NCBI GenBank assembly: GCA_965112155.1
Contig: OZ218100.1
Strand: one strand, 5' to 3'
Length of the DNA: 64,000 nt
Origin: Podarcis liolepis
Taxonomy: Eukaryota
Notes under the pieces: model-generated
What the model was told of the DNA's origin: nothing
The model's database searches: none
The model's input: only the letters and a program-made list of their open reading frames with translations
Position numbers and translations under genes: made by a program
Part shown: positions 6,400 to 42,768 of the stretch, piece after piece
Layout of the letters: every line of letters begins with the position of its first letter
How positions within the stretch are numbered: the stretch's first letter is position 1

Positions 6400-9187
6400 T
6401 GAGTCCACTACTGCTTTCACAATCTCCTCTTCCAGCTGCACAACAAAATGACTCACAGCCCCATGTCACAATCTCTTCCCCACTTCAGAGTGCCTATCTG
6501 CAGTACTCTGTTTCCCAGTCAAAGGAGGAGAAGGCAGTGACCAGGAAGTCAGTGAGTGGGAAATGGCCAAGGCTTCCATATCAATATTCAGATTGTTAAT
6601 ATGCTACAGCTCTAACAGGGCTGCACAGTATTTTGAATTATCTTTTTATTGCATGTGTTTCCAGCCTTAGTTTTTCCCCTTCCACATTTTCTAATTGGTG
6701 TCCGCTGGGGAGGAGACATAGGGGACCATCTTCCTGGCTAAGTACTGGTAAGTGGTCCCCAGTTAGCAACAGCAGTCAAACTTCTGGTTCAGAATTTTTT
6801 GGCATTTAAAATGCATTTCTCCTCACATCTCTTCCCTAAGGAGATTATACCCAAGTGCATTGTTAGGGGTCACCTCTTTTCTGAAAGGTAAATGCATCAT
6901 TTCATCTTATTATTATTCTTTTTCTGTGGCAAGGTGAAATTGCAGGGACACGCAAGCCTTCAAGTTCAGATTCAGCCTTGTGGGCAATCCATTTGACTTG
7001 AAGCTTTTTAAACCTAGTTGTGTTGATATTTTGCCACTAACAAATTTGACAAGTGGTTAAGTATAATGTTTTTGACACACAATGTATCACTGCTTATACA
7101 TTGGAAGGAAATGTTTCTTTTCTGTATACAGCGTTTGTTACAGTAAACAGTGTGCAGTCTTGACAAATAACACTCAGAGCTGACTTGCCTTCTAATATGT
7201 CGACGGGTTTTTCTGAGGCTACTTATTACCTACCCATCAAGGCACCTGGTTGCAAATAAACAGATTCATCATGTTTTCATGTCTGTATGATTGACATCTG
7301 TTGCTGAGAATCCCCAGCAAGTTTGCATTGCAGTCATTTGAATCGCAGATCACGTAATCAGAAATGTTCGCTTATTTTCACTTATCTGTGTGGCTCCAGC
7401 CCAAAGAAGCACACAGAATGATGCAGGCGTACATCTGCACCTTTTAACTTTACTTTTACAGCAGCAACTCTGTTCTGCTGTGCTGTGCTGCATTTGAAAC
7501 CATTTCTGAAACTTCCTTCTTTGTCATCTGGCTGCAACTGAGTTTCTGATTTGGCACAGATGATATGATCATGCTGTTTTTTTTTATAAACAACAACTCT
7601 CCCAGTGCTTGAAAACTGATGCCTAATTTTGGAGGCTTTTAAAAATGTAGTGGTGTTAGATGTCAGCCTACCACAAATCTTATTAGTTTAAAAATAAAAT
7701 GTTTAGGGAAAAGAGTTAAATAGGTTCTTACAAACAAAACAAAACAGGTCAGATAAACCCTTGGTCAGATATGTAGTATTTATATTTTAAAAAATCTCCC
7801 TCACTTGACTAAGTGGTAGTTTAAAAGTAGTGTTTCAGGGCTGTGTTTGGCTGGTTTTGGCTTTTGCCAAACACTTTTTGAGGCAGTGTGAGTAGTTAGA
7901 GGGGAAAACCAAACTAATAATAATAATATGATATGGATATGGATCCACACCTATACACACAATAATGTAACCCTTTGTGAGCAACTTAAACCTTTTTATT
8001 TAAGGGGGCATTTGGGGCCCAGCTCATATTTATTAGAAGTGCTGTTGTGCTATGCTTTGTATGTTGCTTTCGTATTCTATAGTACCTAAATATATTTTCC
8101 CCAAGTTTTATTGATTTCAACTTGAGGTGCATTTTCACAGTACGACAGGATACAAATACTTCAAAAAATAAGGGGGGAAATACATAATACATTGCTATTT
8201 GTAATTTCCATGTTGAAATATCGTCATAAATTTAATGCGCCAATGACATAAGTTGATGGCTGTGCCTTATTTCTTCAGTAATTAATAAAAGGTGTCCAGT
8301 TTTCAAGAGATCATCACATTTTTGTTTTCTGACATTGACTTCATGGCACAGGAAGGAATAACATCAGAAGAGCCCCAAAATTGGACAATAGTGAGGTCAA
8401 ATTTGAGGATCTCATTTATGTGAAATGAAGATACTTTTGGGGTCGAATTGGATGATATGCTCACCATTCTTATCCCCCACAAGTGGCGAGAGAGTGAAAA
8501 CTCAACTTCCCACCCTGCCCTCCAGGTATGCCTGCCCCACCTCTAATTCTCCCAGATGTCCCCGCAGTGGGTGTAATGTTTGAATAGGGTATACATGCCT
8601 TAACTCATGTGGGCATGAACAGCGCAATATCTGATTTAAAATCTGAAAACCCAATTAGGGACTCTGTACATTGGATTTTTACATGTGTTCATATTCACAT
8701 GGTGCACCCACATGTGGACCTAGGATGTCAGACATGGAATAGGCATATCTGGTGGGCAAAGTTCTAACTCCCCGCACTGCGCATAAAAACAAAACTAGGG
8801 AGACTATAATCTTTGAACTTACTGATAACACGTAGCCTCAAATTTTCTCCCTATGCCACACTGCCATCCACTCATGAAAGAAGATGGATTCCCCTCTTCC
8901 CCACGCAGTTCCTGTGTCCCCTTCTCCCCACCCCAAAAACATTATGTTCCAAAGGATTAGAGGAGCCTCAACATCAGCATGGAAGGCGAAATGTGGGAGA
9001 GCTGCAAAGGGAAGGGAAATTGTGAATATCTCCCTGTTTTTCTCTTCTGTTAGAGGTGGTGTCGAAAGCCCTCCCCATGAGCAGACAGACATGGGGAATC
9101 ATCTCTGTTATTGGTAGGGAAATGACTAATTGTGTGCCGCAATACAGAATTCAAATGTGTGCTTCCATGTTTTGCTTTCCTTTATAG

Positions 9188-9379
9188 GCTTTGATTTAGT
9201 GAAATGTGAGGATTCCGGAACACCAAACTATGGCTACAAGATTCGCGATGAAGGCCATTACACAGATACGGTTGTTTTGTACAGTTGCAATCCAGGCTAC
9301 ACAATGCATGGTAGCAGCACTATTACCTGCCTAAGTGGAGATCGAAGAGTTTGGGACAAGCCTTTGCCGACTTGTACAG
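9188..9379 (+). CDS. CSMD1: CSMD1 exon, Sushi/CCP domain (FDLVKCEDSGTPNYG...WDKPLPTCT)
   Basis: Acceptor tttatag at 9187, donor gtaatg at 9380; 192 nt, phase 1-1; matches recalled human CSMD1 FDLVKCEDPGIPNYGYRIRDEGHFTDTVVLYSCNPGY. Confidence 0.96.
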
Positions 9380-9814
9380 GTAATGTTAGATAACACGGTA
9401 ATCTAAAAGTTTGTTAAACGCTTCATAGCTCTCTTTATGGATAATGCATTATTACATATGAGATAACGATGCTTTGAAATGGTATATAATCTATCTCAGG
9501 TTTCCCCCAACCACCACCATATACATATATTGAAACTAAATATGTGGGCCATCTCTGAGGAAATCTGCTACTACTCTCCCTGAAATTCTTTTGGCTTTTC
9601 TTGAAATTCATCTGGTATGCTTTTACCTTGATTTCTGAAGGACATTTGATGCAGCCTAGGAATGAATGGACTACAGACTACAATAAATTTTGACGTCCCT
9701 ATCAAAACTCTTTCAGTTACAGATAGGTAGCCGTGTTGGTCTACCATAGTCAAAAAAAAAAAAAAAAAAAAATCCTTCCAGTAGCACCTTAAAGACCAAC
9801 TAAGTTAGTTCTTG

Positions 9815-9852
9815 GTATGAGCTTTCGTGTGCATGCACACTTCTTCAGATAC
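9815..9852 (-). ncRNA. Minimal type I hammerhead ribozyme motif (identical antisense copy)
   Basis: Exact reverse complement of 9989-10026. Confidence 0.75.
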
Positions 9853-9988
9853 ACTGAAACAGAAGTTGCCAGATCCTTCTATATAGTGAGAAGGTGGGGA
9901 GGGGTATTACTCAGAAGGGTATTCCCACCACCCTTCTGAGTAATACCCTTCTCACTATATAGAAGGATCTGGCAACTTCTGTTTCAGT

Positions 9989-10026
9989 GTATCTGAAGAA
10001 GTGTGCATGCACACGAAAGCTCATAC
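9989..10026 (+). ncRNA. Minimal type I hammerhead ribozyme motif
   Basis: GUAU-CUGAAGA-A-GUGUGC(AU)GCACAC-GAAA-GC-UC^AUAC: core boxes, stem II, stem I (GUAU/AUAC) and palindromic AGCU mini stem III. Confidence 0.75.
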
Positions 10027-10283
10027 CAAGAACTAACTTAGTTGGTCTTTAAGGTGCTACTGGAAGGAAAACTCTTTCAGTTTTCTTCACATTTCTTACC
10101 CAATGAGAAATCTCCAGATTCACCTCATGTTTTGCCTTGAAGCAAAATTCTGTGGTAATTCTTACTAAAAAGAGTGCTCGTTCTCTGTGAGGTCTCCATG
10201 AATTATTTTGTCCTATCTGGTGTTGTCTATACTGACCCCCTGCAAAATTGGTGGCAAATTTGGGTCCATAGCTAGAAGATTGT

Positions 10284-10314
<31 letters not shown>
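10284..10314 (+). repeat. (AAC)n microsatellite
   Basis: Seen directly. Confidence 0.95.
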
Positions 10315-10315
<1 letters not shown>

Positions 10316-10710
10316 ATAATTTTATTGCCCTTGTTCCCAAAGATATGTGTCTTCTTGAATGTACAAAAGTATCCCTCCATCTCTCCCTGTCCCTCACTGA
10401 AACACAGGCCAGTTTTTTAACAAACCATCATTTAGCTGTCTTGTGGCAAGGGTAATATTTGTGTATTGTTCTTTGCATGGATTTTTACTATATCATATTC
10501 TACTCATTTTCTGTTCACAAGGTATATAAGACTAGATCACTCGTATGCTTTCTCCATTAATAATGGGATTAATGTGAAATTCAATATCTGAGTTGCTCTT
10601 TATCTCAATTGTTTGTTTTCATGAGGTCACACATAAAACCTGGTCTTATTATCCTGCTGAAAAGGGGAGATAATGAGCTTTCCAAAGTAATTCAGAAATT
10701 ACTCAAGCTC

Positions 10711-10762
<52 letters not shown>

Positions 10763-10763
10763 A
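10711..10763 (+). repeat. (AAAG)n microsatellite
   Basis: Seen directly. Confidence 0.97.
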
Positions 10764-11103
10764 ATGGCTGGCAGTTGTTCTGAGCCAGTCCAGTATCTTT
10801 CCAAGTCTTCGGATCCTTTCCGCTATCCCTGTATGAGGAGTGAAAAAATGTTGTGAGGGCAAAATAGGAAGTGGAGACCTACAGCCATTCTCATGAGCCA
10901 TCTGAGAGGAAGGGGCTGTTGCTTCTCCCATTTCACCCATGCAGTGCCTGTTTTCTGTCCCCATAGGAACTAATGACTCTAGTAGTTTCTGTGCGGTGAG
11001 GAAAAAGCTCTGTGTGGGCAAAATTGGAGGTATAGTCCAGTTTTCATAGTCTTTTCATACGGTTAATCCATTAGAGGGCGAGTAACCTGGAACTTTAGCT
11101 GCT

Positions 11104-26824: not shown

Positions 26825-26942
26825 CAGGTAGGTAGCCATGTTGGTCTGACACAGTCGAAATAAATTAAAAAAATGTCCAGTAGCACTTTAGAGACCAACT
26901 AAGTTTGTTCTGGGTATAAGCTTTCGTGTGCATTCAGATACC
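26825..26942 (-). mobile_element. Second Penelope-like terminal fragment with a broken hammerhead
   Basis: Aligns with 9720-9852; 10-nt deletion within the ribozyme motif. Confidence 0.8.
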
Positions 26943-28982
26943 ATATATGCCATCACTATAGGATAATGGCAATCATAGAGGAATATGTTGGTGAGTTTGT
27001 AATGAACTGTGAAATGTCTACAGTAGGTACTTAATACCATACAATCTGAACAGCGAAGTAAGAAAGCACTCATTACATATAAGGATATTCTTATGAGTTA
27101 GTGGGGGGAGAGGAACCCACCCCCCCAAGATCTGTGGGTGCCCATTTCCCCCTCTAGATTCTTGAGTGCTGGGGTTTAATCATAGCTGACAGTCTGAGCT
27201 TATTTTCCGCTAGACAAAAGGGCATAGGGAAGTGATGGCCCTGCCATTAAGCCATATACAAGATAAAAGACCCTACAAATAACTGAGGAGAGTTTACCTG
27301 GGCAATGTGGGCATGATGTGGTACAGAGGTGTGTTTTTTTTTTTGGGGGGGGCAATGTGTTATGAGAACAAGAATGAGGAATTCAGGAGAACTCCATGTG
27401 GTGCTGGCTGGAGGAGTCTGCACCAACAGACCAAGACCAAGACAAAGTATGAGTATCAGAACCATCTTGTTGTGAATTTATTTTTGCGCAATCAGTGCCA
27501 ATGACAGTGACTTGCTGTGGGAAGAAGACTTAGTGATGCTATCTCTCTGACTTATGTGGTGAATTCAAATAGATGAGCAGGGCCACATGATGGGAATTCA
27601 GTGAAGGAATGCCTCTCCCTATGGTGACATAATGTTTGCAGCAGTTCTAAGCCCTGCTGGGGAAATAAAGGATTGTCTGTGCTCATTCGGCAATTGAACT
27701 CCAAACCACTTACATTTCCATTATTTGGATTGCTGGGAATATAATATTAAAGAGTCCCTGTTCTAGTCTTCCTGCTACCTTTTTATTCATAGCCCAGTTC
27801 TTCTCTGCAGTTAGCACCACTATTTTAGCCAGCTGGGGAAATTTTGACCCATTTCCCCAGGCATCTGACAGGGATGGTCACCATCTTGCAAAGAGGTACA
27901 GTGACTGAGCCTTGAGAGAAGCAGTAGTTAGGGATGCCACCATCCTCATTTTTCAGTTCATCCCAAGAGTAATAATTCTTGGTATTTCAAAGGGAGAGGG
28001 GATCTGCTCTCGGCTGACATGTTCATTTGAATCACTCATTTCTGGTGACTAGTTACATGATAGTTTATGAAGCTTGTGGGAGAGAACTTTTCTTTAACTA
28101 TCCTTGAATATTGTTGCTACATTATTTCTTTTATTAGTATTAATAATAATAACATGCATTAACAACTTTCTGTCTGATTTGAAAATAGTCAGTTTAGAAA
28201 GGGGGGGGAGGAAATAAACATATCTAGCAGGTAAAATACTCAGCTGTGATTTGGATACAGGTTTCGCTTTCTACAGACACCAAAGCTCATTTTATCCTCA
28301 GAAGGCTTTTGATATACAAGAGAAATATCACTGTGACTTTTGTTGGCTCCCGATTCTCTCTTCAGACTTCCCCCCACCCACCCCCAGACCTTCCACATTG
28401 ACCAGGAAGATCTGAAGAGAGCTTGTAAGCATGTTTGGGTAACTGTACTTATAACCATTCTTATTATTGGGAAATTTGGATGCGAGTATTAAAATCAGAT
28501 TTTGACTTAAATTGAAGTCATGGTATGCAATATTCCCAGCAAAATGATTTAATTTCCATGTGATTAATAAATGAATGAATGAATTCTGAAATGTCATTTG
28601 GTTTTATTTTTTACTTTGGGTATGTTTTCTTCTTTAATACATTCATAAAACCAAAAAGACATTAGGTGTATTATTCTGTTTGTTCTATTCCGAAAATGGT
28701 GGTGAAGTTTAGATGACTGACAGCTGAAGTATTAAAGGGAATAAGAATGATTTTGGTAGGTTAGTTGTACAGAAAATGTAAACCCTAATGTTATTTTCTA
28801 ACCTGCCATCATTACCCTTCCCGGAGGAAATTGGAAGGAAATTGGAACATGATCCATCACAGTGGGCAATTTCCTACAGAAGCAGTCATATACACAACTT
28901 TCCTGACATAACACACAAATAACAAAGAAATGGTTCTGTTACAAAACATGTAGTGCAATGCAAGGCTTTGAAATATTCATAA

Positions 28983-29231
<249 letters not shown>

Positions 29232-42348: not shown

Positions 42349-42543
42349 AAAAACCACGGGAAGCTTGTTTTGACCCTGGCAACATAATGAATGGAACTAG
42401 AATTGGAGCAGACTTTAAACTCGGATCGAGTATTACTTACCAGTGTGATTCTGGCTACAAAATTATCGATCCTTCCACTATCACTTGTGTGATTGGTGCG
42501 GATGGAAAACCTGCGTGGAACAGAGTGTTGCCATCTTGCAATG
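42349..42543 (+). CDS. CSMD1: CSMD1 exon, Sushi domain (EKPREACFDPGNIMNGTRIG...WNRVLPSCN)
   Basis: Long polypyrimidine tract then ttag acceptor, donor gtatgt; 195 nt; read directly from sequence. Confidence 0.96.
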
Positions 42544-42768
42544 GTATGTAGTGAACTGGAAGGTGCTTCTCTCTGCAATTGCAGGCTGGAAGAACTAGTT
42601 CCATGTGCACTGCCATGCTATTAGCCAGCATGAGCCAGTGTGATGGGCCAATGGGGGAAGGAAGGGGAGGGGAGTGGGGAAAAACCTACCCTCTTTGCTG
42701 CTCACCTTTACTGCTGTTCTCATTACTGATGATATAAGGAAAGGAAAGACTGGAGTGTGACTACTCCC

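What the first reader, a model, noticed from the sequence alone, without database searches (positions are those of the whole stretch)
9719..10067. Penelope-like hairpin insertion carrying twin hammerhead ribozymes, one on each strand, in a CSMD1 intron
Seen: a 349-bp insertion bounded by a perfect 15-bp TSD. Its two arms are exact reverse complements over 138 bp (one 9-nt bulge, 9-nt loop). Each arm holds CUGAAGA-A-[stem II]-GAAA-GCUC^ closed by GUAU/AUAC. Known: Penelope-like elements carry minimal hammerheads whose very short palindromic stem III favours dimeric folding, and an extra A after A9 is tolerated in natural hammerheads. Inference: the sense copy sits ~610 nt downstream of an exon and could cut the pre-mRNA, but the antisense arm is transcribed first and would lock it in long dsRNA. 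This is a self-silenced ribozyme cassette whichever strand is read. Identical arms and an intact TSD suggest a young, possibly polymorphic insertion.
Basis: partly seen in the sequence, partly recalled or inferred. Interest (0 to 1): 0.85.

Follow-up and report, generated by a model that had tools for sequence, protein, structure and literature searches.

The report
Young palindromic Penelope-like retroelement insertion
A 349-bp fragment of a very abundant Penelope-like retroelement recently landed in an intron as two back-to-back truncated copies, each carrying the minimal hammerhead-ribozyme motif usual for these elements; this layout is already described and is not a new ribozyme device.

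Summary
Element 9719-10067 is flanked by a perfect 15-bp duplication. It has 138 bp of exact inverted arms and an identical 38-nt minimal hammerhead motif on each strand.

It is best read as an ordinary Penelope-like element (PLE) insertion: two inverted, 5'-truncated copies of the element's 3' end. The left copy carries the optional PLE "tail" (33 nt plus A21); the right copy does not. The literature describes this layout and this type of hammerhead.

New here:
- Contigs from three related samples join 9703 directly to 10068. That is an exact empty site, so the insertion is young and specific to a lineage or an individual.
- The family is hugely repeated in those genomes, and many other copies are palindromic.
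- The "9-nt loop" is templated sequence belonging to the right copy.

No Rfam hammerhead model matches. Cleavage was not tested. The two motifs never lie on the same RNA, so they cannot dimerise with each other. The 138-bp duplex (-271 kcal/mol) would bury the sense copy.

"Self-silenced cassette" therefore describes a by-product of integration, not a function. First-stage notes of this scan list 76 hammerhead/Penelope notes elsewhere in this genome, several of them palindromic. Interest is low.

The parts
9704..9718 (.). Left copy of the 15-bp target-site duplication. Its last 8 nt (9711-9718, TTTCAGTT) also match the tail end of other copies of the family.
   Evidence: perfect direct repeat; empty-site contigs hold one copy only, and the tails of other copies match on to 9711.
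9719..9751 (-). PLE 'tail': a 33-nt extension present at this end only. As RNA (minus strand) it forms a small stem-loop with an AC-rich loop.
   Evidence: coordinates; stem-loop at -8.8 kcal/mol, z -2.1; word depth is a fraction of that of the element body. PMC8557442 and PMC11167929 describe the tail.
9752..9772 (-). A21 on + (U21 in the element's sense RNA): the internal T-rich linker between body and tail, not a poly(A) tail.
   Evidence: other copies continue with a T-rich run after the position equivalent to 10067/10068; the older copy has a mixed T-rich linker here.
9773..9920 (-). Left 5'-truncated copy of the element body (sense on the minus strand). It includes 9 nt (within 9895-9903) that the right copy lacks.
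9815..9852 (-). Minimal hammerhead motif on the minus strand; predicted cut between 9819 and 9818.
9921..10067 (+). Right 5'-truncated copy of the element body (sense on the plus strand). It is 9 nt longer at its 5' end (9921-9929) and ends at the short 3' end with no T-run and no tail.
   Evidence: loose ends after 9920 in three runs read the reverse complement of 9921-9929.
9989..10026 (+). Minimal hammerhead motif on the plus strand (the strand of the host gene); predicted cut between 10022 and 10023.
   Evidence: Fold of the motif alone.
10068..10082 (.). Right copy of the 15-bp target-site duplication.
9199..9381 (+). Context: upstream Sushi-domain exon of the host gene. Two more Sushi exons on + lie at about 29040-29216 and 42366-42545.
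   Evidence: Pfam Sushi, E 2.9e-09; splice signals and the other exons.
26825..26945 (-). Older single copy of the same family (about 80% identical) with linker and tail. The 5' half of helix II is deleted and the cleavage-site C is changed to T.

Best explanation
This is a dead-on-arrival insertion of a very abundant Penelope-like retroelement, or of a short non-autonomous derivative that PLE machinery mobilises.

How it formed (inferred). The element's endonuclease made staggered nicks about 15 bp apart in the intron. Both free 3' ends then primed reverse transcription of the element's 3' region. The top strand started from the distal start site, giving tail + T-linker + body (9719-9920). 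The bottom strand started from the proximal start site, giving body only (10067 back to 9921). The two short cDNAs were joined end to end at 9920|9921 without filler. The result is a palindrome with a tail at one end and a target duplication.

What the hammerheads are. The motifs are passengers. In a full element this region lies in the pseudo-LTR, where the ribozyme is thought to process tandem element transcripts as a dimer or with help from the element's protein. Here each strand has only one sense copy, so no dimer partner exists in cis. In the host pre-mRNA the sense copy is buried in a 138-bp duplex, so self-cleavage of the intron is not expected.

Likely consequence. The only probable effect is a long intronic double-stranded RNA, a possible substrate for editing or small-RNA pathways, carried by this lineage alone.

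Shown: the structure, the motif, the empty site, the abundance of the family and the frequency of palindromic copies. Inferred: two-strand priming, lack of cleavage and lack of function.
For: - Structure and TSD.
- Exact empty site: one contig in each of three DNA runs (organisms A, C, D) joins 9703 to 10068, with about 1% flank differences.
- Abundance: summed word depth over the element is 1e5-2e6 against 8-16 in the flanks, and 2477 of 6188 laid contigs in X1 are >=99% alike.
- Tail: its word depth is only a fraction of that of the 3' body.
- Palindromes: hundreds of joints between near-mirror positions, such as 9852->9989, show that other palindromic copies are common.
- A second, single, degenerate copy with a tail lies in the window.
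- Literature on layout: PLE insertions are highly 5'-truncated, often have an inverted 5'-truncated copy adjacent, and carry a 30-40 bp tail often at one end only (PMC8557442).
- Literature on mechanism: the Anolis Poseidon protein cleaves and extends both DNA strands, and its two RT start sites bound the tail, in an AC-rich stem-loop (PMC11167929).
- Literature on the motif: metazoan PLE minimal hammerheads have a nucleotide between 9 and 10.1, a G10.1-C11.1 pair, palindromic 15.2-16.2 and a 4-5 bp helix I. Dual motifs on opposite strands 100-700 bp apart were already seen (PMC4209133).
- All of these motif features are met here. The Poseidon_Ac junction in the paper's supplement has the same architecture: CUGAGGA-U-helix II-GAAA-CG-UC.
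- Energetics.
Against: - No sequence link to an RT/GIY-YIG-encoding element could be made. None lies in the window and no Repbase or Dfam copy is on hand.
- No read of the source individual was available, so the filled allele rests on the assembly and on its internal logic.
- Palindromic copies across the family are nearly symmetric. Independent priming on two strands does not by itself predict this; it may need template RNAs with discrete 5' ends.
- No Rfam hammerhead hit.
Confidence: 0.85

Rival explanations
1. One reading: a functional or regulated intronic ribozyme cassette, able to cut the host pre-mRNA and held in check by the antisense arm.
For: A complete minimal hammerhead core lies in the sense orientation about 610 nt after an exon. 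The core and helix II show no variant at >=10% among laid family copies, whereas 7 sites vary in the next 30 nt.
Against: - The insertion is absent from three related samples, so no conserved host function exists.
- There is no sense partner for dimer formation in cis.
- The HHR fold costs +86 kcal/mol against the hairpin.
- PLE hammerheads are weak or protein-assisted (PMC4209133, PMC11167929).
- No pile-up of RNA ends at 10022|10023.
- The layout is a frequent by-product of PLE integration (PMC8557442).
Confidence: 0.04
2. Same element, different origin of the palindrome. One cDNA was made, and the polymerase turned back and copied it (snap-back, or hairpin-primed second strand), rather than two independently primed cDNAs.
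For: Palindromic copies of the family have nearly mirror-symmetric junctions (first-stage notes). Self-copying explains this directly. The arms here are identical at all sites that vary within the family.
Against: - The outer ends differ. Tail and linker are present only on the left, and copying either arm cannot produce this.
- The right arm stops exactly at the family's body/T-run boundary.
- The central 9 nt are in the sense orientation of the right copy.
- The arms differ by a 9-nt indel.
Confidence: 0.12
3. A foldback or MITE-type DNA transposon with long terminal inverted repeats and a target duplication; the hammerhead resemblance is incidental.
For: 138-bp inverted arms and a TSD.
Against: - The termini are asymmetric, with a tail at one end.
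- A 15-bp duplication is long for cut-and-paste elements (general knowledge).
- Single 5'-truncated copies exist (loose ends at 9989).
- Junction points among palindromic copies are variable, and coverage across the family is biased toward the 3' end.
- The motif matches every feature of the PLE minimal hammerhead.
Confidence: 0.02
4. An assembly artefact: the inversion or the whole insertion is not present in the animal.
For: None of the three DNA runs laid shows the filled junctions. PLE inverted structures are known to trouble assemblies (PMC8557442).
Against: A perfect TSD whose single copy is exactly what the empty sites hold, family-typical outer ends and a blunt templated junction are what a real insertion gives, not a mis-join. 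The runs laid come from other organisms or samples with about 1% flank divergence.
Confidence: 0.04

Closest known systems
Complex inverted / 5'-truncated insertions of Penelope-like elements with a one-sided 30-40 bp tail (Arkhipova 2006; Craig et al. 2021, PMC8557442)
   Same: TSD-flanked, strongly 5'-truncated, with an inverted truncated copy abutting, a tail at one end only, and a hammerhead motif in the retained pseudo-LTR region.
   Different: Here both copies are tiny (about 150-200 nt), so the whole insertion is a bare hairpin with no ORF. Sequence homology to a named PLE clade was not established.
Minimal dimer-type hammerheads of metazoan PLEs (Cervera and de la Pena 2014, PMC4209133; Lunse et al. 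2017 as cited in PMC6765202)
   Same: Core CUGANGA/GAAA/UH, one extra nucleotide between 9 and 10.1, G10.1-C11.1, no helix III hairpin but a palindromic A-GC-U, a 4-bp helix I, and reported pairs of motifs on opposite strands.
   Different: Helix II is 5 bp (a 14-nt perfect palindrome) rather than the 7-8 bp of the Schistosoma examples. Activity was not tested.
Poseidon_Ac (PAc) of Anolis carolinensis (PMC11167929)
   Same: Same hammerhead architecture at the pLTR/ORF junction. Two RT start sites bound a tail around an AC-rich stem-loop. The protein nicks and extends both strands, which would give exactly one tailed and one tail-less end.
   Different: Different sequence family. The ends lie 45 nt and about 100 nt after the cut site, against about 82-89 nt in PAc. 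The ATG in helix II opens only a 9-codon frame here. An 8-nt target/tail identity is seen here, whereas PAc initiation was reported as non-homologous.
L1 twin priming (Ostertag and Kazazian 2001; from my own knowledge)
   Same: Both nicked strands prime cDNA and the two cDNAs are joined, giving an inversion within one TSD-flanked insertion.
   Different: In L1 the second primer anneals internally on the same RNA, so the two parts cover different regions. Here both arms copy the same 3' region.
Animal non-LTR retrozymes (PMC7229834; bioRxiv 10.64898/2026.07.22.740005)
   Same: Short non-coding units with type I hammerheads, related to PLE pseudo-LTRs, abundant in reptiles, amphibians and fish.
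   Different: Retrozymes are head-to-tail tandem repeats that give circular RNAs. This is a single inverted pair.

Membership tests
Penelope-like element insertion | Target-site duplication and a precise empty site | tested here: met
   Perfect 15-bp repeat. Contigs of three runs join 9703 to 10068 with one copy of the 15-mer.
Penelope-like element insertion | Strong 5' truncation; family coverage biased toward the 3' end | tested here: met
   Both copies keep only about 150-200 nt of the 3' end. Word depth is highest at 10012-10079, and many copies start at 9987-9991.
Penelope-like element insertion | Inverted 5'-truncated copy directly adjacent | tested here: met
   Copies 9719-9920 (-) and 9921-10067 (+) abut with no filler.
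Penelope-like element insertion | Optional 30-40 bp tail, often at one end only | tested here: met
   33 nt (41 if counted to 9711) beyond the T-linker, at the left end only. Tail word depth is a fraction of body depth.
Penelope-like element insertion | Parent element encodes a telomerase-like RT plus a GIY-YIG endonuclease, or the sequence is homologous to such an element | not testable with these tools
   No such ORF lies in the window next to this family. No Repbase or Dfam copy and no other part of this genome is on hand. Metagenome scans were blank.
Minimal (dimer-type) PLE hammerhead | Core C3-A9, G12-A14, A15.1/U16.1 and a cleavable H17 | tested here: met
   CUGAAGA ... GAAA-GC-UC on both strands.
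Minimal (dimer-type) PLE hammerhead | One nucleotide between 9 and 10.1, a G10.1-C11.1 pair, palindromic 15.2-16.2, and a helix I of 4-5 bp | tested here: met
   Extra A, G...C closing a 5-bp helix II, AGCU, GUAU/AUAC. The descriptor gives 2 hits against 0 in 200 shuffles.
Minimal (dimer-type) PLE hammerhead | Stems supported by compensatory changes among copies | tested here: inconclusive
   Among copies >=90% alike, no site in 9993-10021 varies at >=10%, so there is conservation but no covariation. The older copy has lost half of helix II.
Minimal (dimer-type) PLE hammerhead | Self-cleavage, as a dimer or with protein | not testable with these tools
   The RNA run shows no pile-up of ends at 10022|10023. 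A weak start pile (13 of 63) at 9818 is one nt off for a 5' product.
Canonical hammerhead (Rfam Hammerhead_1/3/II, HH9, HH10) | Match to the family covariance model; helix III closed in cis | tested here: not met
   No hammerhead hit at E<=10 on 2 kb or on the arm alone. Helix III is reduced to A-GC-U.
Non-LTR retrozyme | Head-to-tail tandem repeats, each with a hammerhead | tested here: not met
   The two units are inverted, not tandem.
Foldback/MITE DNA transposon | Equivalent termini at both ends | tested here: not met
   The left end has linker plus tail and the right end has neither.
miRNA precursor families hit by Rfam (MIR2646, MIR1222 and others) | Score at or above the gathering threshold | tested here: not met
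   141 against 245 bits and 58 against 90 bits. The hits only reflect a long perfect hairpin.

The most novel reading that the evidence does not exclude
This copy may be a clean natural footprint of the still unresolved PLE integration step. Both nicked strands prime cDNA, one from each of the two alternative RT start sites. The distal start would be guided by about 8 bp of annealing between the nicked target end (TTTCAGTT) and the terminus of the tail. A census of such one-tailed palindromes could then settle how PLEs make their inverted structures.
Probability: 0.25. Interest if true: 0.4.

Novelty: new member of a known kind. Interest (0 to 1): 0.17.

Why it matters
As biology it is ordinary. 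It is one of a very large number of copies of a PLE-type repeat, in a layout and with a ribozyme motif that are both published.

Its modest uses are three:
- It is a dated, lineage-specific presence/absence marker in a neuronal-gene intron.
- It is a 138-bp perfect intronic double-stranded RNA that may attract editing or small-RNA pathways.
- Its ends are unusually readable: one tailed end, one tail-less end, a blunt templated junction and an 8-nt target/tail identity. These bear on how PLEs build inverted structures, which the literature still calls undefined.

Tried and rejected
- Rfam at E<=10 on 9000-11000 and on 9960-10067 gave no hammerhead. Only sub-threshold miRNA-hairpin hits appeared, and I reject them as generic hairpin matches.
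- A full-text search for the 34-nt motif found nothing.
- Two metagenome scans, one for the motif with a free helix II and one for the conserved 3' block, found nothing. No independent copies were therefore available for covariation or for a covariance model.
- The search of earlier findings by sequence, and by the words RT/GIY-YIG, was blank.
- Lunse et al. 2017 (PMC5785218) is not held. I cite it only through PMC6765202.
- I rejected the snap-back origin as the main model because the outer ends differ, because of the orientation of the central 9 nt, and because of the 9-nt indel.
- I rejected reading A21 as a poly(A) tail. It is internal to the unit: the older copy and other copies have a T-rich linker followed by the tail.
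- RNA ends: the start pile at 9818 is weak and one nt off, so I do not count it as evidence of cleavage.
- I did not build a joined spliced model of the host gene. Exons were examined one by one by reference, and the CSMD1 name was left untested.

Full report
**1. What is there**

The sequence at 9719-10067 is bounded by a perfect 15-bp direct repeat, AAAACTCTTTCAGTT, at 9704-9718 and 10068-10082. Read along the + strand, it consists of:
- a 33-nt unique stretch (9719-9751);
- A21 (9752-9772);
- a left arm running to 9920;
- nine central bases (9921-9929);
- a right arm running to 10067.

The arms pair exactly over 121 bp (9774-9894 with 9947-10067) and 17 bp (9904-9920 with 9930-9946). Nine extra bases occur only in the left arm.

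The 34-nt string CTGAAGAAGTGTGCATGCACACGAAAGCTCATAC occurs once on each strand (9993-10026 +, 9815-9848 -), and none is expected by chance. As a + strand RNA the element folds into one hairpin of -270.9 kcal/mol, z = -32.7. I make three small corrections: the A run is 21 nt, the unique end is 33 nt, and the "loop" is explained in section 4.

**2. The hammerhead motif**

Each arm reads GUAU-CUGAAGA-A-GUGUG(CAUG)CACAC-GAAA-GC-UC^AUAC.

Cervera and de la Pena (PMC4209133) define the minimal hammerheads of metazoan Penelope-like elements by four features:
- the conserved core;
- a G10.1-C11.1 pair;
- a palindromic 15.2-16.2 with no helix III hairpin, so that two copies must pair to build helix III, together with a short helix I of 4-5 bp.

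All are met here. I coded these features as a descriptor. It hits only the two arms in the 64-kb window and nothing in 200 dinucleotide-preserving shuffles.

The pLTR/ORF junction of Poseidon_Ac, given in the supplement of PMC11167929, has the same architecture: CUGAGGA-U-helix II-GAAA-CG-UC.

Rfam 15 gives no hammerhead hit at E<=10, either on 2 kb or on the arm alone. That is expected for a motif without helix III. It does mean that membership rests on the published descriptor, not on a curated model. The Rfam hits to MIR2646, MIR1222 and similar families are far below their thresholds and only reflect a long perfect hairpin.

**3. It is a mobile-element insertion, it is young, and its family is huge**

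I laid Logan contigs of three DNA runs (coded organisms A, C and D) on 9400-10400. In each run one contig runs from the left flank to 9703 and continues directly at 10068:
- X1 record 2;
- X3 record 8, 2483 nt long;
- X4 record 16.

That is the exact empty site with a single copy of the 15-mer. These flanks differ from the window at about 1% of positions. Two of the differences (9610, 10174) are shared by all three runs. The window therefore comes from a somewhat different lineage or individual, and the insertion arose after that split or is polymorphic.

No run showed the filled junctions, and reads of the assembled individual were not on offer.

Over the element the summed word depth is 1e5 to 2e6, against 8-16 in the flanks. 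The tool warns that this is not a copy number, but it does show a very abundant repeat. In X1, 2477 of 6188 laid contigs are at least 99% alike, which points to recent activity.

**4. Anatomy read against other copies**

- *Right end.* Contigs of other copies leave our sequence after 10067/10068 and go on with a T-rich run. The right copy therefore ends exactly at the body/linker boundary. The A21 at the left end is the complement of an internal linker, not a poly(A) tail.
- *Older copy.* The copy in the window at 26825-26945 has the same order: body, mixed T-rich linker, tail.
- *Tail abundance.* Word depth over the tail is only a fraction of that over the 3' body, so the tail is optional in the family.
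- *Centre.* After 9920, other copies continue with GGTGGGAAT..., the reverse complement of 9921-9929. The central nine bases are thus nine more templated bases of the right copy. The two copies abut bluntly at 9920|9921.
- *Tail end.* The tails of other copies keep matching as far as 9711 (19-22 contigs per run, with unrelated flanks beyond). The last 8 nt of the left TSD copy (TTTCAGTT) therefore equal the canonical tail terminus. The duplication is either 15 bp, or 7 bp plus an 8-nt identity between target and tail.
- *Other palindromes.* Hundreds of joints link near-mirror positions, for example 9852 to 9989-9991. Other head-to-head palindromic copies are therefore common in these genomes.
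- *5' ends.* Many copies, single or palindromic, start at 9987-9991. That is the 5' edge of helix I, not 10023 as would be expected if hammerhead cleavage made the template's 5' end.

**5. What it is**

These are the published hallmarks of Penelope-like element insertions:
- a high degree of 5' truncation;
- often an inverted 5'-truncated copy immediately adjacent;
- a 30-40-bp tail, often at one end only;
- hammerhead motifs in the pseudo-LTR (PMC8557442).

The in vitro work on Anolis Poseidon (PMC11167929) adds three points. The protein cleaves and extends both DNA strands. Reverse transcription starts at two internal sites whose interval is the tail, in an AC-rich stem-loop. Hammerhead cleavage is protein-assisted and is not needed for insertion, and no RNA-seq reads end at the cut site. 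Our tail also folds into a small stem-loop with an AC-rich loop (-8.8 kcal/mol, z = -2.1).

Dual minimal hammerheads on opposite strands 100-700 bp apart were already noted in 2014.

I could not link this family by sequence to an RT/GIY-YIG ORF. None lies in the window and no repeat library is on hand. It may be a non-autonomous derivative, of the kind discussed for retrozymes in the 2026 preprint.

**6. How it most likely formed (inference)**

- Staggered nicks about 15 bp apart were made in the target.
- The top-strand 3' end (...TTTCAGTT) primed at the distal start site, possibly by annealing to the 8-nt tail terminus. This cDNA ended at 9920.
- The bottom-strand 3' end primed at the proximal start site. 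This cDNA ended at 9921.
- An end-to-end template jump or host repair joined the two.

A snap-back of a single cDNA is less likely, for four reasons. Neither arm can template the other's outer end. The right arm stops exactly at a family boundary. The central nine bases have the orientation of the right copy. The arms differ by a 9-nt indel. The near-symmetry of palindromes across the family is not predicted by independent priming and remains unexplained. Template RNAs with discrete 5' ends would account for it.

**7. What it does**

The host gene lies on the + strand. A Sushi exon (Pfam E 2.9e-09) with acceptor and donor signals ends at 9381, and two more Sushi exons follow at about 29.0 and 42.4 kb.

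The pre-mRNA would carry the antisense arm first, then the sense motif. Three computations bear on activity:
- Forcing helices I and II of the sense motif costs 85.6 kcal/mol relative to the hairpin.
- The motif alone folds no better than shuffles (z = -0.4).
- Two sense copies prefer a 14-bp trans duplex of the palindromic helix II (-32.6 kcal/mol) over the AGCU/AGCU helix III (-3.9).

The two motifs of this element are never in the same RNA, so they cannot serve as each other's dimer partner. The only other copy in the window is antisense and degenerate.

In the RNA run the flanks have no depth, and the element is covered on both strands by reads from other loci. No pile-up of ends occurs at 10022|10023. 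A weak start pile at 9818 (13 of 63) is one nt off for a 5' product, and I do not count it.

I conclude that the motifs are inert passengers. "Self-silenced cassette" describes the thermodynamics of a by-product, not a function.

**8. Novelty**

Both the kind of insertion and the kind of ribozyme are known, so this is a new copy of a known kind. The scan's own first-stage notes list 76 hammerhead/Penelope notes on other pieces of this genome, several of them TSD-flanked palindromes. They are unchecked, but they agree with the palindromic joints I saw. The small residual interest lies in the readable ends and the 8-nt target/tail identity.

Noticed in passing
window 26825-26945 (-): An older single copy of the same repeat family (about 80% identical) with T-rich linker and tail. 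The 5' half of helix II is deleted and C17 is changed to T. A possible short duplication (ATTATC[C]TAT) flanks it.
   Followed up: partly
window 10040 and 10051 (RNA run X23): A>G in 27% and 18% of reads of one mate direction (4% in the other), while DNA contigs of three runs show about 0.1%. This is either ADAR-type editing of hairpin copies of the family or one expressed variant locus.
   Followed up: no
window 9987-9991 and mirror 9850-9854: The 5' ends of many family copies, and the junctions of many palindromic copies, pile up at the 5' edge of helix I, about 34 nt upstream of the predicted hammerhead cut. This suggests a discrete template 5' end that is not made by the ribozyme.
   Followed up: partly
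window 9711-9718 versus 10075-10082: The last 8 nt of the target duplication equal the terminus of the tail in other copies. This is a possible target/template annealing at the distal RT start, at odds with the published 'non-homologous' initiation.
   Followed up: partly
window 9899 and 9914 (RNA run X23): About 100 reads carry G>T at 9899 and leave the element at 9914 into one common sequence. A fragment of this repeat is part of a well-expressed transcript elsewhere in the genome.
   Followed up: no
window 29040-29216 and 42366-42545 (+): Two further Sushi-domain exon-like stretches on the same strand as the exon at 9199-9381, 13-20 kb apart. This matches the tandem-Sushi part of a CSMD-type gene.
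   Followed up: partly
window 10274-10310 and about 10740-10800: A (CAA)n microsatellite just downstream of the insertion, where no contigs were laid, and a (GAAA/GGAA)n-type run further on.
   Followed up: no
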